Source: Bigelowiella natans CCMP2755
Taxonomy: Eukaryota; Protista; Cercozoa
NCBI GenBank assembly: GCA_000320545.1
Contig: ADNK01002368.1
Coordinates: 1-64,000, forward strand
DNA: 64,000 bases
Direction: 5' to 3'
The notes under the pieces are model-generated. The model ran no database searches and was not told the DNA's origin. It saw nothing but the letters and a program-made list of their open reading frames with translations. Both the position numbers and the translations under genes were made by a program. This document shows positions 11,096 to 40,006 of the stretch, piece by piece. Every line of letters begins with the position of its first letter. Position 1 is the first letter of the stretch.

Positions 11096-12857
11096 CGATT
11101 CCTGTAGAAGGTCCATGTTTGCCTAGATTTAGTTCAGTTGTTCATTTTCCGACAAGAAAATATTTTCGATCCCCCTTGACAAAAATGATCAGACAGCCAT
11201 GTCATGTAATTAATTACCAGCGGTCCCAGCGGTCGTAGAAGGGACAGTCATTCAGACAGAAGTAGAAGGGACAGCCATTCAGACGAAAGGCAATGTTGTC
11301 GATGGACAGTCCATTCAGTCTAATAGCCCTTCGATGTCGATCCCGGAAAAGGATTGGCTGATCCGGGCTCCAAAATCGAGCTCAAGCCGACAGATTGGGG
11401 AGCTCGGATACCTTAGCGCTCATGACGAAATCGCCAAGACTCACTACGCTTTCGTTGCGTATACCGAAATCGACTTGAAACGTCAGAGATGGAGCTTTGG
11501 GGTCGCAGCGAAGGGATGTGCAAGCCTTAAGGTGGACCCCTACCGTTCTCTACGCTCGAAAATTTCCAAGGCTGCAGTGAAAGGTCTTCCATACTGTGTC
11601 GTAGGACATGAAATGAAATCGAGACCAGGAGATTCTAGGATGCTGCAGAATCGCATTTACTATGATCCAGACACGCTGCGAGCCACGAAATTCGCGTTGC
11701 ATGTCTGCATGCGCAATGCGGATGGAAGCGCGCAGTCAGAAAAGCTGCTCACACTCGAATGGCCCAATCCCCAGCTTCCAGAGGACAAAACTACGATAAA
11801 ATTGCCAAAAGATAGCTCGAGGTATAAGAACAAAGAACTTCTGCATCTGTCCCAGTACGATGTCATCGCTGATCGAGACTACGAGCTGCTTGCCTTCGTG
11901 CAGCACGATATTGACAAAGGAACCTGGAAGCTACACGTCAAGAGCTCGGTGACCGTGTCTAGTGTCATAGATCCCTTCAGCTCCCAATTTCTCGCTCAGC
12001 TCGAAAAAGCTGCTCAAAAAGGTCAGGCACATGCCCTATTTGGCCATTCCATCAAACCAGGCCCGGGCAATCCCAGGTTGATGGAAAATAGGGTTTATTT
12101 CAACAAAAACTTAAGGCCTACCCACATCGAGATTCGCCTTGCAACTCGCAAGCAGAATTCAGAAGCGCGCGAGACTTCCGTCAAGTCTGCGCCTTGGCCA
12201 GAGACAGAGGAGGCACAGAAAAGGACCGAGGCTAACAGACATCCTCTCATCTCCCCGCCCAATTCAAGTGACAGGAAACACGTTGTCCCATTGGGTTATA
12301 TCTGCTCGCGCGATAACATTGCATCCAGAGACTACGCCTTCTCGGCCTACATGGAGAAGCCCATACCGAACCCGAATGGAAAGTGGAAGCTCCACGTGCG
12401 GTCGAAAGAAACCGTTTCGTTGTCTCTCGATCCATTGGCTCGTTCTTTAGAGAGCCAAATTTCTTCGGCCGCAAAATCCGGTGTGGGGTATTGCCTTGTA
12501 GGCCACAAGATCATCCCGAAGCCCTCTGATGCGCGCAAGCTGGAACATCGTGTGTACTTCGACGCAAAGACCCTTCAGCCTACCAAGTTTGCTCTTCATC
12601 TCGTCACCCGGGACCCAGAAGGAAAGGCGAAACCAGAGAGGGTGTTGTGCTTCACATGGCCAGGAAATGAGGGGGAAACCTTCGTCGAAGGCAAGATCGC
12701 AATGAATGCGATGCCTGATTCACATGTGAAATTGCTCCAGCTTCTCTATGGGACAGTTTCTCCTCCTGTGATCGAATTACTCGACAAAGAAGAATTCCAT
12801 CGCAAAGGCCGCCAGCTGCTCGATGCCGTGTGGGCATCTGTGGAATCGATGAAATAA
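11092..12857 (+). CDS. Hypothetical protein with three copies of an unrecognised ~120-aa domain
   Basis: The 507-aa ORF (11334-12857) stays open upstream to 11221. A likely first exon at 11092-11110 (MSIPVE) splices in phase through an intron at 11111-11220. The internal repeats are at aa ~24-144, ~169-289 and ~320-443 of the ORF. Confidence 0.85.
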
Positions 12858-30700: not shown

Positions 30701-31653
30701 ATGAAATCCTTGAATTCGCTAGCTTGCAAATGCATATTTGTTGAAGCATCAGAGGAAAACATGTGGGGAGCATGAGGGAGATGCATGAGGAAACATATAT
30801 TATAGTAATTCAATATACAAAGTAATTGGCTATGTAAGAAATTATTCTTCTCAATTGGTTTCGCTGAGGTGTGAAGGGGGGGGGGGGCGGGGGATCTAGA
30901 GTCTACGTGTAAAAGATTCCACCTTTCTGAGAATCTTCGCCCACCCGCGAAGCTATTCGGTGCAAGTGTTGTTCAGCAACTCACAATACAATTCCAGGTA
31001 CTTATTTAGCTACGACATCCACATGAGATAGACGTACAACAAAATAGAACTTTTGTGAGATTTTTTCTTCGTTTATGTCTGTACAATCCCGAATTCGGAA
31101 GTCGCATGGTTTCAAATGATGCCTCTTGCAATCTGATTTGCTGTTGTAACGATCGATCCTCAAAAATGATCATTGAGTGCTATTATTTAGCGAATTCGAA
31201 CTTGCGACAAGCTAATGTGCGCTCTCAAAATTGCAAAATGCACATTTCACAGCTGCATCACTAGAGAAATGCAGGGAACTTTTGTGATTGTAGAGGAATA
31301 CGGGAGCGACGCGGTCCACGAGCAACTCGTAGTGAAAGTTTGATTAAAATAACATGAATATGAAGCTAGAGACATCCAATTATATATGTCGCTGCTACAA
31401 TACAAATCCACGGATTTCTTCTCGGAAATCAGTGTCAAATTCTCGATATGGATTTCCAGTAATCACGGGACTTTCCAAAAGAAAATTGATAAAGTATATC
31501 ATACTTTAGAAGAGACATAGAGATAAAGAACAAATGACTGAATATTAGAGCCTATGATCAGCGTGGCCCGAAGAATTTGAATCTGCATTTCCAGAGAGAT
31601 CCTAATCGACGTCGCCCCCCCCTCAGTCCGTGCCTTATTTTCTGATTAAGGCA

Positions 31654-34295
31654 TGATTGTCTATTTCGCATATGCTACCGCCGCCCTTGTGCTGGCTTTT
31701 GCGGCATACATTATCTTGGTAAGAACACACAAAGTTTCCATTTGTTTCTACCCCATTAAGTGACCATGGCCTGAGAGCAAAATAGTTTCTCGATGATCCG
31801 TAATTTGAGTGAAAGCTGCGTTTATTTCGTCCGGAAAGTGGTTAGAAGGATTCCGTAGTAAGATATATGCAGACACATAACTATTGCAGATAAATCCAAA
31901 GTCATCAAATTATTATTCCATTGAGAAGTCCTTTGTGGTCGCCTCCCTTAGAGCGCCTCCAGTCCGGTGAGGACGAAGGAAGGGAAGTCTCTTGCTCTTC
32001 CACCGGTGCGAAAAAATGCATTTACACATAGTTCTATCATTTATTATGAAAATCCAAGATATTGCGCGATAACTGATATTCTACCTACGAGATATCATGG
32101 TGAGAAATGCTTACAATATCAGGTTTTTTCTCCTAGCATTCCACTAATTGGAGGCCTTGTTGAGTTCATGAAGCACCCGCTTGAGGCTGTACGCAAGGGC
32201 TACAAAAAGCATGGAGACATCTTCACTATTTCAATGTTAGGGAAACGCCTAACCTTTCTCGTTGGGCCGAAAGGTGGAAAATTAACTCTTACAGATATTT
32301 GTACATACACACATATGCGCACATGTATGTAGAAAAATAAATATTTGTATACATCGTGTTGATTCATCTGAATCACTGTGTATTTTCGCTGTTGCATATA
32401 CCTGCTTACGTGTCTTGCAGCTGGGGAGGTGTTTTTCTCCGCAACAGATGCCGAGCTGGGTCAAGAGGAAGTCTACAAATTTATGACAGCGGTCGGTTGC
32501 TGTCCTGGGCAGAATTTGTTATATTTTATGTGCGATGCTCTTTATGGTTAATAATTAGTCACATATGTGGATCCCTTGCTATCACTGCTTTTGCCTGATA
32601 AAGATATATCGTAATAATGTGAGCAGGTTTTTGGAAAAGGCGTTGTCTATGACTGCCCAGCTAACATAAGGTGATCATTTCGTTGTAGTATACACCACAA
32701 CCTTCTATATAATGAACACGAATCTAATAATACAGTCTTTATGGCTCGTTTCTTGCCCTCTTTGTCATTCCCGTCTTATTAATCTCCTTTTTACGACATG
32801 CATCTTCGATTTCGTGTTCTTGATTGTCGCAACTTCAGATCTCAACAATTCAAGTTTCTTGGCAAGGGCCTCAAAACTGAGCGGTAGGGGGGGAGACTGA
32901 AAGAGAGTGGACAACACGAACCTGCATTCAAAGACACACGCATTAACATGTTTATATGCCGAGGTTGAAGGATGGATTTGTAGTTCATTTGCATTGTAAA
33001 TTCTGACAAAAGATCATATAGTCGATTCTTGTTTTTGGCCCCCGTCCTTGCTTAGTCTAAAGTCATACGTGCCATTGATCATGGAGGAATGCAAGAAGTA
33101 TTTAGATGAAAAGCTAACCGGGGAGGTAATACTAGTATTAGCACCACCTATATTAGCACCACCTATATATATCATTTCTCGTCGTTAAGGGCAAATGTTT
33201 GGCTGCATATATCAGTTCTCTCTTCATTATGACCAAAGTCTTATGCTGTTTGATTCTCATTCTCCCTTCTCCTCACAATCCCCCCTCTTTCCAGAGCGGA
33301 GAGATCGACATTTTGGACACAATGAGCGAGATGCTAATTCTGACGTAATTGAATTGATTGTTGCCAGCATCCATTCATTGATTTACAATGTTTCGGAGCA
33401 TTTTACTTACCTACCCGCGGTAGCTACTTTCCCATCTCCTCCTCTCCTCCACCCCATATTTCTGATGCCTTCTCTCCCTTTCTACGTTCCTTGTTGTAGC
33501 TCATCCCGTTGCTTGATGGGAGAAGAAGTGCGGAAAAACCTATTTGGCCAGGTGCTACACCACATGAATCAATTCCCTTCTTATTAAGATCATTGAGACA
33601 GCAGCTGTGACCAATCACGCTGATGTGATGATGAAGATGATGACGATGATGATGATGACGATGATGCTGGTCCTGATATACTCGCGTCTTTTTGTTGATC
33701 TTTAAAAGGTTGCAGCACTGTACCACGACCTCGATCAAGGTAGTCGAAAAGTAGTAACAGTAGTGAAGAGATTCACCGCCGAGTGTCAAGAAGGAAGAGG
33801 AGGAAGAGGATAGCTACTTTCGGGGATGATGGAAGAGAAACGATGTATATATGAGGGCGGGGAGGAAGGAAAGAGAGCGATAGAGAGAGAGAGAAGGAAC
33901 AGAAGGACAAAGATGAAGAAAAGGACTAGCACTCGGATCAAACAGCAATCCCTCCTAACGAATATCATGATGCTATGTTGTAAGGCATCACCCCATTGTC
34001 TGTCTTCTTCCCAAATCTTCCTACACCTGCACACCGACGACGTGATATTGCTCGAGCCGAGATGGTCAAGCTCTTTGGCAAGGTCATAAGTCTACAATCT
34101 CGATTATCTTTGCTGCTTTTGACAACCAAACGCATGAAAGAGAGCAAAGAAGAATATTATGACTAACACAAACTGCTTTTGTTGTGTAATAAATTCAATC
34201 TTAGGTTATTCGTGAAAGACGCAGTAGGAAGGATATCGATACTTCAGATATGCTTGGGTGCTGTTAAGATAAACACTCCCGTTTGACTCCCTCTT

Positions 34296-34337
<42 letters not shown>

Positions 34338-34546
34338 AATGGCCATGGAAGCACATAAGTACTTTCTCGAGGGAGATTGGATGATTGGGTAGAGGTGGGA
34401 GGAAATGGGAAATATGTTCTCTGTTCAGTATTGATGATAATAAATTCGTCGTCTTTGTTGAAGGTATCTTTGCACTGTGCGCTACAAGCCAGCTAAGGGT
34501 AATAATCATATTGCAAAATAGATTTGAGAACATAGTGTTAATGAGT

Positions 34547-34583
<37 letters not shown>

Positions 34584-35298
34584 ATGTAGAGCAAGTATGA
34601 ACCACTTATTAAGTTATAAATCGTCGTTATTCAGGCGAGAAGGAGGGCCGTCTCCTCACTGTTGATGAGATCACGGGGTGAGTAGTAAGTGGTAATGATG
34701 GTGGTGGTGATGGTGGTGCGGTATCTAACGATGAATGGAGAAGAATAATGATGATATGTAAATCTAATAACGTTTTATGTCACCACATTGGTCGCAATCA
34801 TCATCATCATCATCATCATCATCAGATTTCTCATCGGCCTGCTTTCGCTGGGCAACACACCTCTTCAGTAACCTCCACGTGGTCGGTGTTGTAATAACCC
34901 AGATAAAGGGTGGGGGGGGGGGGGGTAGTGTACTAATGGGAAGACACGAAAATTGTTAAGACGACAACAACGTATGAAACATCGCCAAGCTCCTCACTGT
35001 CCATGCTAAAATACTAGCTGTTGTTGCTTCTCCTGTTGGTGCTGTCACTGCTAAAGCATCATCATCATCATCATCATCATCATCGTCATCACCACCACCA
35101 CCATCCTATCCTATCTACCTTCTTATCATACCCTCGACCGACAATCCCCTACCCTCCAGGTCGATCTTGTACATGATGCATACCAAATCTAGAGGCTATT
35201 ATGACAGAATGTGCAAAGAGCTGGCGGATTTCGGCGACAAGAAGAAGGTGAGATTTTTTTTCAGATATAATATAAATATATATATATATATATATATA

Positions 35299-35338
<40 letters not shown>

Positions 35339-36219
35339 ATGTTAATGTAATAGATATTATGGTCATCATATTATAAAACGATCGAGTACAAGGACTTTCT
35401 TCTTCCCCCGTCCCCCCATTGTTTCTATTGCAGTCTTTCCTCCTCCTCCTCCCCCGCCTCATCATCATCCTCCTCTTCCTTGTCCCAATAATCCGTCCTT
35501 TATTCGTCGGTCTCTCTGTGGTTCCTCTTTTCTTCTCCTTCTTCTTCTTTACAGGGGGGTACTGTGGAGGTTGATTACGAGGATACAACGAAGATGAAGT
35601 ATTCACATTCAAATAGAAATAGTGTGTGTGTGTGTGTGTGGGAGAGAGAGAGAGAGAATGAAGAGTAAAAAGTAGGGCGGGTTTGGGTCGTCGTTTTACA
35701 ATCGCCAACAGTAATAACAACAATCATCATCATCATCATGATCATCTCTCTCTACTACCAATCCAGATTCACAGAAGCTTGCATCCAAGAGGGCCTACGC
35801 ATGTACCCCCCCCTTATTCTACTTATGCGCATGGCACGGAAGGTAGCAAAGCTGGTATGGTAGAGGGGGTGTTGATTCAAGAAGGGATTGGAGTTTAGCT
35901 TATCGATTTCTTCGAGCTTCTTTTCATATCTCACTACAGCAGTGAACTTAGATAGATTGTAGGCGACTATTGTCTATCATCATCATTATCATTTTAGAAT
36001 TATTGGAAGAACGAATTACACACGCACACACACACACACACACATACAGGGGCGTGAATACGGCAAATACGGGATACCGAAGGGAGACATCGTTGTTACG
36101 TCCCCCGCAGCATCTATGCGCCTTAACAACATCTTCAAGGTTCTACTCACCACAAGGGCGGGGGGCTGATGCAAGAATGATCTACTTGAGGCAGAAAAAA
36201 CAAATATTATTTCAGGGAG

Positions 36220-36271
<52 letters not shown>

Positions 36272-36728
36272 GGAGATGAATGTTATCTATGTCGAGCCAC
36301 CAGATCACCATCATCGTCAGTTTTTTAGATCTAATTTTTGCAATGATTTTGTCCTTCCCGCGCTGTTTGTTTCTGTTCTTTTTCCTCCCCCTCCTCATCT
36401 TGCTTCTTCGTTGCATCGTCGTCTTACTACCCAGGGCGCTGATTCTTACAACCCTGAGCGATGGTTCGCTGCTAAGGTAACAATCAAGTAGAAACGTACG
36501 ATTCATATTGAGGGGGGGGGGGATTAAGGGAGGATCGAGCACATGCAAAATGATTCATCTCACCGCCACTAACATTGAATAATATACTACTACAGGACCT
36601 TCCTAGATACTCTTTCATTGGATTTGGTGGTGGTCGCCACGCATGTTTGGGCGGAGCTTTCGCGTAATCACACACACACACACAATATATAGATATTAAA
36701 AAATCTATATTTATCAATTCATTCATTC

Positions 36729-36774
<46 letters not shown>

Positions 36775-37387
36775 TACAAAAGCTGCATGATATGATAGAT
36801 AAGTAGTGTTTGATTCCTTGAATGTAATGAAATGAAAAGTAAGAGCAGTTATCATCTCGCTCCACACACACAGTTGATTCATGCTCTCATCCCCATTCTT
36901 GCCCCCTTCCTCAATGCGGCTAATCAGATACCTGCAAATGAAATGCATTTTCACTGTACTCTTCAACACCTATGACCTCGAAGCTGTTTCCGACAAAATG
37001 CCACTGCCCAACTACGCAGCGATGGTAGCAAAATAAGAGAGAGGAGTATGTAGTAGCCTGATCTTGCAAATACAAGCACGCACGCACTCATGTATTCAGA
37101 CCGCTATCTATCACGACGACTTCGGGATCATCTTGTGCATCTTTATCATGTTTATTATGCAGTAGGAAGCAGGAATAATTCGTATCGTATGCTGTACGAC
37201 TACTACTACTACTACTTTACTACGCATCATCATCAGCATCATCATCATCATGATCATCATCATCATCAGGTGGTGGGACCTCACCATGGAAAAGAAACAC
37301 GTGTGCGCTACCGTCGAAAGAGCCCTCAAGACATCCAAAAGTCTCTTGACCTCAAAATACCCGAGATCCGGACGGAGAGGTGAAGAC

Positions 37388-37425
<38 letters not shown>

Positions 37426-37775
37426 GACAATGAATGATAGCGAGGAGGGACGTGGGAGGGGGGGGAGGATAGAAAAACTGGCCACAAGCACTTGGCAGGA
37501 TAACCACATGTGAAAGAAGACCAAAACAACTCCATCTGACCCACTCTGTTCCCATTGGAATATTACCAGCAAAATAAGCAATGATTGTAGTTGTGTTTAT
37601 CAATATGTTAATACATGTACCGAGCAGCTCAAAACTGCTGCCCCCCGATGACAAGAAGGCAGAGGAATTCACGTTAGAAGAGGTGGTGTCGACTATATGG
37701 ACCCTGCCCCGCCCTCATGTCCCTTCTCTTCCTTTCTATCAAGAACGTGGTTCCACCTCCTACAGATATGATATA

Positions 37776-37817
<42 letters not shown>

Positions 37818-37926
37818 TTCAGGTGAAAAAGCACAACACGGAGAAGGATCTTTGGGTTGTGGTAGATGACCTTGTCTTCGATATCAGCGAATATGTTCCG
37901 CAGCACCCTGGGTACTTCTTCTTCTT

Positions 37927-37957
<31 letters not shown>

Positions 37958-37961
37958 CCGT

Positions 37962-38031
<70 letters not shown>

Positions 38032-38517
38032 GTAGAAGTGCCACTACCTAGAAAGTAACAATTAACTTAGTAAGAGAACAATGATGCGTTATATATAAGC
38101 TGCTGTGTTCTCGTCCCGTATCTTTCCTTCATTGCGAACTATGGCTACCTGTGTTTGCTGCTTGTGTACCACTTGGCTTATTATTCATACACACACTCTA
38201 CCCCTACCCCTCCCCCTCCCCCTCCTACAGAGGACTCAAGATCCTCAACAACGCTGGTGGAGACTCAACAAAAGGCTTCAAAGGTGATGATAACGGTGGT
38301 AGTGTGGGTAGCGTGTGCGCGCGTGCGTGTGTGCGTGCGTGCGCGCGCGTGTGTGTGTGTGTGTGTGTCGCGACGATCGTGTGAACAGAATTACTCGCTA
38401 TTCTTGTTGCTAATGATTTCTTTTGAATCCTTGCCACTCCCAACAGGCCCTCAGCACCCGGCACATGTGATGAACACTATTATGGAATTTTACAAGGGAA
38501 AACTCAAGAAAGAATAA
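31654..38517 (+). CDS. CYP51: Sterol 14-alpha-demethylase (CYP51) with a C-terminally fused cytochrome b5 domain
   Basis: N-terminal anchor MIVYFAYATAALVLAFAAYIIL, then IPLIGGL..., EEVYKFMTAVFGKGVVYD, I-helix ALFAGQHTSSVT, EXXR (QEGLRMYPP), PERW and heme motif FIGFGGGRHACLG, with CYP51 end VVGP...RVRYRRK. A phase-compatible intron at 37380-37627 leads into FTLEEVKKHNTEKDLWVVVDDLVFDISEYVPQHPGGLKILNNAGGDSTKGFKGPQHP...EFYKGKL. CYP51 identity is high confidence; the fusion is somewhat lower. Confidence 0.88.
37628..38517 (+). other. Cytochrome b5-like heme-binding domain exons (3' part of the CYP51 gene model)
   Basis: Four exons with consistent phases. Both axial His motifs are present (HPGG and QHP), and there is no C-terminal membrane anchor. 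Confidence 0.92.
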
Positions 38518-39412
38518 GCGTATCATCATCATCCAAGAAAAATCTTGGTCGAGATTGCAACCGTTTGTGGCGCGAGTGCCTAATCATCAGTTGAATCTTG
38601 TCATGTGCTGCTTACGGGTCCTATGATATGTCCTCGATCACTGTGCAATGCATGCGCACAATGTCTACGTCATAAACCTCACGTAGTAGTTCCTGCAAAA
38701 TATGTGCATATCTTCTGTGGCGCTAATTGTTCGCGATCGAATGACTCTAGGACTAGCAGACGGCTCGCAATGCATGTGCGGCTAATACGAGCTTGTCGGG
38801 CTAAAAAATTAAGGCTTAAATGTATAGCGCCGACCTGCTGAAAATGCATCAGCTTTTTAATTCTGGCTGCTTGAGCGGTGCGATGCTTAATTTTCATAGT
38901 TGTTTAATTGCTGCCTTGCTAGCTTGTGCGCGCTGTAGACGTATACACCGCAAAATTCGAAGTTAGACACGCCTTGTTAGGACATGTATGTCATCACATA
39001 CACGCCTTTGCTGGTATAAACCATGATATGTATTTTGAAAAAAATTAAAATTATAAAACCAGTCTCACATATTTGTTATGCGGCAATTATCGAGACATAT
39101 GTGTGGCGATAGGGAAAATGCGCCTATTCGATCAGAATGCCGGCAAAATAAATAGCGGATACTGATTGTGTTTCTCATCGTGTTTCTCTTATGTTCGTGC
39201 ATATCACATGTAAACATACAGCAAGCCATGGGATAGCATGCTGCAACGTGCACATTGTTGTTTATATGCAGCACTTTTTGAATGAGTAACATGGTATCGT
39301 ATGGCACATCTCAGTCCGTTGTCGCTCATTATACAAATTTTGGTATTGGCAATTTCATCATATAATTAATTTTGTGTGTCATTAATCATTATTATCAGGC
39401 TACACATCATTC

Positions 39413-40006
39413 TCATCGGTGTTGAAATAGCAAGGCGTGGCACTTCACTATGTTGCTTGCAAGCTCTTCGGATGGTAGGCGCATATCGCACCGATGAACA
39501 TGAACGATATGAGGATGGCCAGAGCTTGTCTTGATCTTCTGTTGGAGATGATCGACGAATCCTGCTGTTGCTGCTGCTGCTGATGATGATAATGACGGCA
39601 AGGTTACTGCAGGAGTAGCAATCGTTGTGATATCATCATCATCATCATCAATCCCATATCTCATACCGTTGGCATAGTCTCCTTCATTCTCCAAACATAT
39701 CTCATTTATGCCCCCAGCTTTCGAGTGATTGCTGGCCTTGATTGATGGATGCAAATTTTCGATCCGTTCTGCCTCCAGGGTGGAATAGCATGCTTCGAGA
39801 AATCTCCGGGCTCTAATTGACAAAAACATTGAAGGGACTTGTCATTCTTATCGATACATCGTCGTCAGCAGCCTTATGCACTTATTGAATGGTTCAGGAT
39901 GATAATCTCTGGAAAGTAGGAGCAACTGCTGCTGCAGCAGGACAACTCACCTTGCATGGTCGTTTTTGTACGGGAAAACAGGATGTTCTAGCCGTCTCGT
40001 TACCTG

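What the first reader, a model, noticed from the sequence alone, without database searches (positions are those of the whole stretch)
31654..38517. CYP51 sterol 14-alpha-demethylase apparently fused in frame to a cytochrome b5 domain
Seen in sequence: after the normal CYP51 C-terminus (VVGP...RVRYRRK) the frame continues SPQDIQKSLDLKIPEIRTE. A GT donor at 37380 (GAG AG|gtgaag) and an AG acceptor at 37627 (cag|C TCA AAA) are phase-compatible. Splicing them gives ...RTESSKLLPPDDKKAEEFTLEEVKKH..., a ~30-aa linker and then a complete b5 domain with both heme His motifs (HPGG, QHP) and no membrane tail. Established knowledge: microsomal CYP51 normally takes electrons from a separate NADPH-P450 reductase; cytochrome b5 can support or modulate P450 turnover; and free ER b5 normally has its own C-terminal anchor. 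Inference: this is a two-heme enzyme tethered by the P450 N-terminal anchor and carrying its own electron relay. I do not recall a described eukaryotic CYP51-b5 fusion, but I cannot check the literature.
Basis: partly seen in the sequence, partly recalled or inferred. Interest (0 to 1): 0.88.

Follow-up and report, generated by a model that had tools for sequence, protein, structure and literature searches.

The report
CYP51 fused to cytochrome b5
This alga (Bigelowiella natans) really does make its sterol 14-demethylase (CYP51) as one protein with a cytochrome b5 domain on its tail, and the b5 is the same special type that was shown in 2025 to feed electrons to CYP51 in plants, so the fusion is natural evidence that this partnership is old and widespread.

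Summary
Confirmed. The window is Bigelowiella natans (chlorarachniophyte) nuclear DNA. A 27-exon gene (CDS 31653-38517, + strand) encodes a 600-aa protein: N-terminal membrane anchor, CYP51 P450 domain, about 32-aa polar linker, C-terminal bis-His cytochrome b5 domain with no tail anchor.

The proposed splice (GT at 37380, AG at 37627) is real. A de novo assembled 2,037-nt transcript contig is identical to the spliced window except at two bases, crosses that junction in frame and carries one 600-codon ORF.

Intact fused ORFs also occur in three other B. natans transcript assemblies and in six to seven other chlorarachniophytes. A 63%-identical relative encodes the fusion as one intron-free genomic ORF. 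More distant fusions occur in Fabomonas and many environmental protists, some with two b5 domains.

The b5 is of the plant CB5LP type (GPQH motif, 54% identical to rice CB5LP). CB5LP was reported in 2025 as the essential electron carrier of plant CYP51 and described as plant-exclusive.

The gene models are already public, but I found no paper describing the fusion. Electron relay is inferred, not shown. The scan's earlier notes cover only this genome and hold nothing comparable.

The parts
31605..38700 (+). Whole transcribed unit of the CYP51-b5 fusion gene (27 exons, 26 GT-AG introns of 118-404 nt rich in microsatellites)
   Evidence: Transcript contig L001 (2,037 nt) aligns from 31605 to 38700 in 27 blocks. 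It ends in three A's that the genome does not template.
31653..31718 (+). Exon 1 coding part: start codon and N-terminal membrane anchor (MIVYFAYATAALVLAFAAYIIL)
   Evidence: Mean Kyte-Doolittle hydropathy over 19 residues is 2.04.
31952..32005 (+).
   Evidence: Present in transcript L001 and in protein P0001. AG/GT borders.
32123..34677 (+). Exons 3-14 of the P450 domain: 32123-32273, 32421-32491, 32627-32670, 32839-32883, 33056-33125, 33295-33344, 33500-33551, 33709-33739, 33985-34082, 34205-34257, 34464-34498, 34635-34677
   Evidence: Exon 3 alone hits solved CYP51 structures at E = 1.2e-9. The CYP51 B'/C signature VYKFMTAVFGKGVVYD spans exons 4-5.
34826..34881 (+). Exon 15, I-helix (FLIALLFAGQHTSSVTSTW in transcripts). 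In the window it is frameshifted: one T is missing at 34843-34845, 34837 is G rather than C, and an in-frame TAA follows at 34869-34871
   Evidence: JGI model P0115 skips this exon. Five transcript-derived proteins are intact.
35160..37024 (+). Exons 16-22 of the P450 domain: 35160-35247, 35555-35598, 35767-35842, 36050-36139, 36435-36476, 36596-36663, 36928-37024. The heme-thiolate Cys codon is at 36644-36646 within FGGGRHACLG
37270..37379 (+). Exon 23: end of the CYP51 fold (VVGPHHGKETRVRYRRK) plus the first 19 residues of the linker
   Evidence: Solved CYP51 chains align up to about residue 492-494 of P0001.
37380..37627 (+). Intron 23 (248 nt, GTGAAG...CAG, holds a (CTG)n run). Removing it joins CYP51 to b5. 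If retained, TGA at 37381-37383 ends the protein one residue later. It also holds an in-frame ATG at 37581
   Evidence: Removed exactly in L001: the junction sequence GGACGGAGAG|CTCAAAACTG lies at transcript nt 1574 onward. Splice-site scores.
37628..38517 (+). Exons 24-27 (37628-37682, 37823-37911, 38231-38283, 38447-38517): rest of the linker and the cytochrome b5 domain. Axial His codons at 37904-37906 (HPGG) and 38455-38457 (GPQHP). TAA at 38515-38517. No tail anchor

Best explanation
This is one gene of Bigelowiella natans encoding a 600-aa ER-anchored sterol 14-alpha-demethylase (CYP51) whose C-terminus carries a cytochrome b5 domain on a polar linker of about 32 residues. The linker is moderately conserved among chlorarachniophytes and unconserved beyond them.

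Shown:
- The mRNA is spliced across 37379|37628 into a single ORF.
- The architecture is conserved in other chlorarachniophytes and in more distant protists.
- Both b5 heme-ligand histidines and the P450 cysteine ligand are invariant.
- The b5 belongs to the GPQH-type, tail-less subfamily that includes plant CB5LP.

Inferred: the b5 domain is the enzyme's tethered electron carrier. An external flavoprotein (NADPH-P450 reductase and/or NADH-b5 reductase) reduces the b5 heme. The flexible linker lets b5 dock on the proximal face of the P450 and deliver electrons for the three successive oxidations of the 14-alpha-methyl group. The P450's own N-terminal helix replaces the N-terminal anchor that stand-alone CB5LP proteins carry.

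The protein is not self-sufficient, because it has no flavin or NAD(P)H domain.
For: Identity of the organism and the transcript:
- a 600-aa protein (P0001) is 100% identical to exon 3.
- it is encoded on a 2,037-nt transcript contig. Its cluster holds three complete MMETSP ORFs of 600 aa and the JGI B. natans model 79359.
- the contig equals the 27 spliced window exons at 2,031 of 2,033 positions and crosses the 37379|37628 junction in frame.

Domains and fold:
- Pfam p450 at 3.6e-60 (residues 43-474) and Cyt-b5 at 2.1e-18 (residues 527-597).
- residues 36-492 match solved CYP51 structures. The best is Acanthamoeba CYP51 (E = 6.7e-128, 46-47% identity, TM-score on the target 0.88-0.92).

Conservation of the fusion:
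- 25 of the 120 listed hits are fused, always with b5 C-terminal and with no tail anchor.
- named members are Norrisiella sphaerica, Lotharella globosa, Amorphochlora amoebiformis and Fabomonas tropica.
- a 63%-identical homologue is a single uninterrupted 1,803-nt ORF on 38-44 kb genomic scaffolds.
- the Amorphochlora transcript maps to its genome across the joint.
- both axial His residues are invariant in 25 fused b5 domains.

b5 subfamily:
- the b5 profile's best stand-alone hits are plant 'cytochrome B5-like protein' (CB5LP) sequences. 107 of 120 carry G[PD]QH, 82 have an N-terminal membrane helix and none a C-terminal one.
- 54% identity and 94 bits to rice CB5LP, against at most 57 bits to any solved canonical b5.
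- PMC13155568: CB5LP binds CYP51 and is required as its electron carrier in Arabidopsis.

Structure prediction:
- AlphaFold2 model with mean pLDDT 85 and pTM 0.79; both domains fold confidently.
Against: - No protein-level evidence: the 68-kDa polypeptide, its two heme spectra and its activity have not been observed.
- The window as assembled has a frameshift in the I-helix exon. Taken literally, this copy could not make an active P450. I attribute it to assembly error because same-strain transcripts are intact.
- I could not get coordinates of the predicted model, so docking of b5 on the proximal face is not tested.
- No canonical tail-anchored b5 sequences were in the b5 tree. The CB5LP assignment therefore rests on scores, motif and topology.
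- The donor GT overlaps an in-frame stop, so an intron-retaining unfused isoform is possible in principle.
Confidence: 0.82

Rival explanations
1. Two adjacent genes. CYP51 ends at TGA 37381-37383 (...RTER). A separate N-anchored b5 gene starts at ATG 37581 (MIVVVFINMLIHVPSS..., in frame with the b5 exons). The fused reading would be a coincidence or a minor read-through product.
For: - An in-frame stop lies right at the donor, and an in-frame ATG lies 47 nt upstream of the acceptor.
- The 13 residues after that ATG are hydrophobic (mean hydropathy 2.6), loosely like the N-terminal anchor of stand-alone CB5LP.
Against: - Four complete transcript ORFs and one partial one join the domains.
- No 512-aa product is in the cluster, and no 47-150-aa protein shares even three 5-residue words with this b5.
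- The gap would leave only 197 nt for a 3' UTR, promoter and 5' UTR.
- The hydrophobic stretch is too short for a membrane helix.
- Relatives encode the fusion as one intron-free ORF.
Confidence: 0.04
2. The fusion protein is real, but the b5 domain does not carry electrons to the P450. It would act as an allosteric effector or a stabilising or heme-handling module, as b5 does for the CYP17A1 lyase reaction or as MAPR/Dap1 proteins do for CYP51.
For: Established knowledge: b5 can stimulate some P450s without electron transfer, and Dap1/PGRMC1 (b5-fold) proteins bind and stabilise CYP51.
Against: - Both axial histidines are invariant in all 25 fusions. This is the bis-His redox-heme arrangement, not the Tyr-ligated MAPR type.
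- In Arabidopsis, a CB5LP variant described as devoid of electron-transfer ability fails to support CYP51 (PMC13155568).
- Tandem-b5 versions look like an electron wire rather than an effector.
Confidence: 0.1
3. This copy is a pseudogene: the 1-nt deletion in the I-helix exon is real and the locus no longer makes active CYP51.
For: - The window sequence has the frameshift and a premature TAA at 34869-34871.
- The JGI gene model had to skip the exon.
Against: - The transcript contig that otherwise matches the window at every base, including the strain-specific Ser in exon 2, is intact at this site.
- The other 26 exons are flawless.
- The two differences lie 7 nt apart, a pattern typical of a local assembly or sequencing error.
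- CYP51 is normally essential for sterol synthesis.
Confidence: 0.03
4. The fused transcripts are assembly chimeras of two overlapping or neighbouring mRNAs.
For: De novo transcriptome assemblers can join adjacent genes.
Against: - The join is an exact GT-AG intron removal that keeps the frame.
- It recurs in independent assemblies of several strains and species.
- It matches intron-free genomic ORFs in relatives.
Confidence: 0.01

Closest known systems
Plant CB5LP (Arabidopsis At1g60660) working with CYP51A2 (Zhao et al., Sci Adv 2025, PMC13155568)
   Same: - Same b5 subfamily: GPQH motif at the second heme ligand, and the domain ends about 21-24 residues after it with no tail anchor. Identity to rice CB5LP is 54% without gaps.
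- Same partner enzyme, CYP51.
- Both are held at the ER by an N-terminal helix.
   Different: - In plants the two are separate genes and CB5LP has its own N-terminal anchor. Here the b5 is covalently joined to the C-terminus of CYP51 and uses the P450's anchor.
- The paper calls CB5LP exclusive to plants. Here it appears in Rhizaria, an ancyromonad, oomycetes, Palpitomonas and many uncultured protists.
Methylococcus capsulatus CYP51-ferredoxin fusion (MCCYP51FX; P450 domain PDB 6mcw)
   Same: CYP51 with its immediate one-electron carrier fused to the C-terminus through a linker. The P450 domains are homologous (264 bits; TM-score 0.90). Both still need an external reductase.
   Different: The carrier there is a 3Fe-4S ferredoxin in a soluble bacterial protein. 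Here it is a heme b5 domain in a membrane-anchored eukaryotic enzyme.
Self-sufficient P450s fused to a diflavin reductase (CYP102A1 P450BM3, CYP505 P450foxy)
   Same: The redox partner is fused C-terminal to the P450 domain.
   Different: Those carry FMN/FAD/NADPH domains and need no other protein. This protein has only p450 and Cyt-b5 domains and cannot take electrons from NAD(P)H by itself.
Enzymes with a fused cytochrome b5 domain (front-end fatty-acid desaturases, Scs7 sphingolipid hydroxylase, nitrate reductase, sulfite oxidase, flavocytochrome b2)
   Same: Same logic: a b5 domain tethered to the enzyme it exchanges electrons with. The b5 folds are homologous.
   Different: None of these acceptors is a P450. 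I found no described natural P450-b5 fusion in the searched literature.
Canonical tail-anchored microsomal cytochrome b5
   Same: Same fold and bis-His heme ligation. Known to supply the second electron to some P450s.
   Different: The canonical form has GHS rather than GPQH at the second ligand and a C-terminal membrane anchor. It scores lower against the fused domain: at most 57 bits with the single sequence and at most 85 bits with the profile, versus 94 and 118-128 bits for CB5LP.

Membership tests
CYP51 (sterol 14-alpha-demethylase, P450 family 51) | P450 fold with the heme-thiolate motif FxxGxxxCxG | tested here: met
   FGGGRHACLG, Cys codon at 36644-36646. Pfam p450 E = 3.6e-60. Invariant in 23 aligned fusions.
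CYP51 (sterol 14-alpha-demethylase, P450 family 51) | More than 40% identity to family members (the P450 nomenclature rule), with CYP51s as best matches | tested here: met
   46-47% identity to Acanthamoeba CYP51. The top 55 solved-structure hits are all CYP51.
CYP51 (sterol 14-alpha-demethylase, P450 family 51) | CYP51 signature segments: B'/C region YxxF/LxxxVFGxxVxYD and I-helix AGQHTSS | tested here: met
   Both are present in the transcript-derived protein (VYKFMTAVFGKGVVYD; LLFAGQHTSS). In the window the I-helix motif is interrupted by the 1-nt gap.
CYP51 (sterol 14-alpha-demethylase, P450 family 51) | Catalyses 14-alpha-demethylation of obtusifoliol or lanosterol-type sterols | not testable with these tools
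   Needs an enzyme assay.
Cytochrome b5 heme-binding domain (PF00173) | Domain score above Pfam's cut-off, with both axial histidines present | tested here: met
   66.5 bits against a cut-off of 23.7. H558 and H581 are invariant in 25 fusions.
Cytochrome b5 heme-binding domain (PF00173) | Binds heme b and is redox active | not testable with these tools
   Needs spectroscopy.
CB5LP-type b5 (plant cytochrome b5-like protein subfamily) | b5 domain at the extreme C-terminus, no C-terminal membrane anchor | tested here: met
   The protein ends 23 residues after GPQH. Range is 21-24 in all fusions and the median is 22 in stand-alone homologues. None has a C-terminal helix.
CB5LP-type b5 (plant cytochrome b5-like protein subfamily) | Closer in sequence to CB5LP than to canonical b5, with the GPQH motif at the second ligand | tested here: met
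   No canonical b5 was included in the tree, so this rests on scores and motif.
CB5LP-type b5 (plant cytochrome b5-like protein subfamily) | Small stand-alone protein with its own N-terminal transmembrane helix | tested here: not met
   Here the domain is the tail of a 600-aa P450. It is a fused derivative of the subfamily, not a CB5LP protein in the architectural sense.
CB5LP-type b5 (plant cytochrome b5-like protein subfamily) | Transfers electrons to CYP51 | not testable with these tools
   Shown for Arabidopsis only (PMC13155568).
Self-sufficient P450 (P450BM3-like) | Contains flavin and NAD(P)H-binding reductase domains | tested here: not met
   Only p450 and Cyt-b5 domains were found.

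The most novel reading that the evidence does not exclude
The tail-less GPQH-type b5 (CB5LP) is not a plant invention. It would be the ancient, dedicated electron carrier of CYP51 across eukaryotes. It stays separate in plants, oomycetes and Palpitomonas. It is fused to CYP51 in chlorarachniophytes, an ancyromonad, probably thraustochytrids and several uncultured marine lineages, in some of them twice in tandem, and it is lost in animals and fungi. In the fused lineages CYP51 may draw both electrons through b5, making sterol demethylation independent of direct P450-reductase docking.
Probability: 0.35. Interest if true: 0.8.

Novelty: new variant of a known kind. Interest (0 to 1): 0.68.

Why it matters
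CYP51 is the most conserved P450 and the target of azole drugs and fungicides. How it obtains electrons was thought settled (P450 reductase, with b5 optional) until a 2025 study showed that plants need a special b5, CB5LP.

A natural covalent CYP51-CB5LP fusion, conserved in several distant protist groups, is 'Rosetta stone' evidence that the partnership is real. It also indicates that the partnership is much older and wider than plants.

The fusion offers a ready-made single-polypeptide system for studying P450-b5 electron transfer and docking. It shows that 'plant-specific' needs revising. It may also be a useful scaffold for engineering b5-assisted P450 catalysts.

Tried and rejected
- My first hand-built 26-exon model missed exon 2 and read a stop in the I-helix exon. 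The transcript alignment corrected it.
- A word-indexed search with the single b5 domain found no candidate at all. This is useful as a negative for a stand-alone product but gave no homologues. Repeating it with a 25-sequence alignment worked.
- The highest-scoring stand-alone hits of that search (P0261-P0272) are tandem b5 proteins of another type whose score is the sum of two domains. I rejected them as relatives and used them as the outgroup.
- Three short hits (P0264, P0266, P0270) are C-terminal fragments of fusions, not stand-alone proteins.
- I tested whether the intron at the domain joint is positionally conserved, which could hint at exon shuffling or regulated retention. It is not: Amorphochlora has it 9 codons upstream, in another phase, with no immediate stop.
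- DNA for two environmental loci (P0124, P0169) could not be fetched. Only the gene tables are available.
- The structure model gave no coordinates, so heme-to-heme geometry could not be measured.
- Eight literature searches found no description of a CYP51-b5 or natural P450-b5 fusion. The library lacks most subscription journals, so this is not proof of absence.
- The taxon label of one fused protein (MMETSP0961, taxid 87120) resolves to a fungus and is probably a typo for 87102, Aurantiochytrium. I left it unverified.

Full report
**What is in the window.**
Reading 31000-39500 on the + strand shows a eukaryotic gene of many short exons. The introns are short, GT-AG and full of microsatellites. 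I assembled the exons by eye and by script.

The last P450 exon (37270-37379) runs past the usual CYP51 end (RVRYRRK) for 19 more residues. It ends at a GT (37380) that overlaps an in-frame TGA (37381-37383). An AG at 37626-37627 opens an exon in the matching phase. Four exons (37628-37682, 37823-37911, 38231-38283, 38447-38517) then encode a complete cytochrome b5 domain ending in TAA at 38515-38517.

One b5 exon alone hits Pfam Cyt-b5 at 1.4e-8 and solved b5 structures. One P450 exon alone hits solved CYP51 structures at 1.2e-9.

I scored the splice sites against matrices built from the gene's other introns. The candidate donor (5.8 bits) and the intron length (248 nt) are typical. The acceptor (-0.4 bits) is weak but within the range of the confirmed introns.

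**Independent proof of the splice.**
I searched 1.8 billion representative proteins with the 50-residue exon 3. This returned a 600-aa protein, P0001, 100% identical over the exon.
- P0001 contains the CYP51 part, the linker and the b5 domain exactly as predicted.
- It is encoded on a 2,037-nt contig from a JGI-hosted transcriptome assembly, as a single ORF annotated p450 + Cyt-b5.
- Its 90% cluster holds three complete 600-aa MMETSP ORFs, a 363-aa fragment, and the JGI gene model Bigna1 79359 of Bigelowiella natans. This names the organism.

Aligning the contig to the window gives 27 blocks from 31605 to 38700. Spliced together, the window exons equal the transcript at 2,031 of 2,033 positions. 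The transcript crosses 37379|37628 exactly and in frame. The contig ends in three A's that the genome does not template, which is consistent with a poly(A) site about 180 nt after the b5 stop.

**The frameshift.**
The only two differences between window and transcript lie 7 nt apart in exon 15. Base 34837 is G in the window and C in the transcript. One T is missing from the run at 34843-34845. As assembled, the frame shifts between LIGLL and AGQHTSS, the I-helix core of every CYP51, and meets TAA at 34869-34871.

The JGI model skips this exon and is 581 aa. All five transcript-derived proteins read FLIALLFAGQHTSS. P0001 shares the strain-specific Ser of exon 2 with the genome model, so it comes from the same strain. 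I therefore read this as a local assembly error, not a pseudogene.

**Is the fusion conserved?**
A search with P0001 listed 120 CYP51s, of which 25 carry both Pfam domains. In all 25 the b5 follows the P450. The protein ends 21-24 residues after the second heme ligand, and the linkers that could be measured are 28-49 polar residues with little sequence conservation between lineages.
- Seven of them are 63-80% identical to B. natans. Named members are Norrisiella sphaerica, Lotharella globosa and Amorphochlora amoebiformis.
- The 63% homologue is a single uninterrupted 1,803-nt ORF on 38-44 kb metagenomic scaffolds and in an NCBI assembly, flanked by ordinary eukaryotic genes. There the fusion needs no splicing at all.
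- Two further environmental fusions are likewise called as single ORFs on 38-kb and 10.8-kb contigs. Their DNA could not be fetched.
- In Amorphochlora the transcript maps to the genome in 25 exons across the joint. The linker intron sits 9 codons upstream of the B. natans one, in another phase.
- More distant fusions (38-48% identity) include Fabomonas tropica (an ancyromonad), two EukProt proteomes and many marine metatranscriptome clusters. Two of these clusters carry two b5 domains in tandem.

On a tree of the P450 domain alone, 23 of the 25 fusions fall on one side of a branch. One pair lies elsewhere. At least two to three gains or losses are therefore needed.

**What kind of b5.**
In an alignment of the 25 fused b5 domains, both axial histidines are invariant, within H-x-G-G and G-x-Q-H-P. 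A profile of this alignment finds, among small proteins, mainly the plant 'cytochrome B5-like protein' (CB5LP) of angiosperms, Selaginella, Klebsormidium, Chlorokybus and prasinophytes. It also finds proteins of the oomycete Aphanomyces and of Palpitomonas.

Of the 120 best hits, 107 carry G[PD]QH, 82 have an N-terminal hydrophobic helix, and none has a C-terminal one.

| Comparison | Score |
|---|---|
| B. natans b5 domain vs rice CB5LP | 54% identity over 82 residues, no gaps, 94 bits |
| B. natans b5 domain vs best solved canonical b5 | 57 bits |
| Fused-domain profile vs plant CB5LPs | 118-128 bits |
| Fused-domain profile vs solved canonical b5 | at most 85 bits |

In a b5 tree the fused domains are mixed among stand-alone GPQH-type proteins and separated (99% SH-aLRT) from a different tandem b5 type used as outgroup. 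Resolution is poor and canonical b5 was not included.

**Why that matters for mechanism.**
Zhao et al. (Sci Adv 2025, PMC13155568) report the following for Arabidopsis CB5LP:
- It is an ER protein with reversed topology: N-terminal anchor and C-terminal b5.
- It lies next to CYP51A2 in vivo.
- It raises CYP51A2 activity in yeast microsomes 4.6-fold with NADPH, but only if it can transfer electrons.
- Moving its anchor to the other end does not matter.

They describe CB5LP as exclusive to plants. The B. natans protein joins the same two partners in one chain. The most economical reading is a tethered electron carrier, reduced by an external flavoprotein and delivering electrons to the P450 heme.

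The protein has no flavin domain, so it is not self-sufficient in the P450BM3 sense. Its closest architectural analogue is the CYP51-ferredoxin fusion of Methylococcus capsulatus, whose P450 domain is among the structural matches.

An AlphaFold2 model built on 23 fusions is confident for both domains (mean pLDDT 85, pTM 0.79). Its P450 part superposes on Acanthamoeba CYP51 with a TM-score of 0.88-0.92. I could not inspect the inter-domain geometry.

**Rivals.**
- Two separate genes: this is contradicted by the transcripts. No 512-aa product is in the cluster, and no small protein shares this b5 sequence. Only 197 nt would separate the two genes, and relatives encode intron-free fused ORFs. A minor intron-retaining or internally initiated isoform cannot be excluded.
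- A non-redox role for b5: possible, but disfavoured by the invariant bis-His ligation and the plant data.
- Pseudogene and chimeric-assembly readings are unlikely for the reasons given above.

**Novelty.**
[quoted passage not shown] Eight full-text searches found no paper that describes a CYP51-b5 fusion or any natural P450-b5 fusion. A paper on sterol synthesis in Schizochytrium, a lineage that may carry the fusion, does not mention b5.

I rate it a new variant of a known kind, namely a redox-partner fusion of a P450. Its main value is as evolutionary evidence that the CB5LP-CYP51 partnership predates and extends beyond plants. The scan's earlier notes cover this genome only and contain no comparable finding elsewhere.

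Noticed in passing
window 34826-34881 (34837 and 34843-34845): The genome assembly differs from the same-strain transcript by a G/C substitution and a missing T, 7 nt apart, in the I-helix exon of CYP51. This frameshifts the exon, and the JGI gene model skips it (581 aa). It is probably a local assembly error in the reference genome.
   Followed up: partly
proteins P0125, P0126, P0240 (not in the window): Some environmental or MMETSP CYP51 fusions of about 710 aa carry two GPQH-type b5 domains in tandem after the P450.
   Followed up: partly
proteins P0290, P0332 (Aphanomyces), P0305 (Palpitomonas bilix): Stand-alone, N-anchored, GPQH-type b5 proteins (CB5LP-like) exist in oomycetes and a cryptist. 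This is at odds with the published statement that CB5LP is exclusive to plants.
   Followed up: partly
protein P0385 (cluster of P0162): This fused CYP51-b5 is labelled MMETSP0961 with TAXON_ID 87120, which NCBI resolves to the fungus Rhizopogon burlinghamii. Taxid 87102 is Aurantiochytrium limacinum, so the label is probably a typo. If so, thraustochytrids (industrial DHA producers) would carry the fusion.
   Followed up: partly
L005:8632-8818 (Amorphochlora amoebiformis genome): The intron in the CYP51-b5 linker lies 9 codons upstream of the B. natans one and in a different phase. The intron at the domain joint is not positionally conserved between chlorarachniophytes.
   Followed up: yes
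window 11334-12857: An unusually long single-exon ORF (507 aa) built of three similar units of about 120-160 aa, also flagged by another first-stage note. I did not examine it.
   Followed up: no
window 31700-38450 (introns of the gene): Nearly every intron carries one or more microsatellites: (CAT)n, (GA)n, (CA)n, (TA)n, (CTG)n. Several acceptor sites lie directly at the end of a (CAT)n run (catcatcag|).
   Followed up: no
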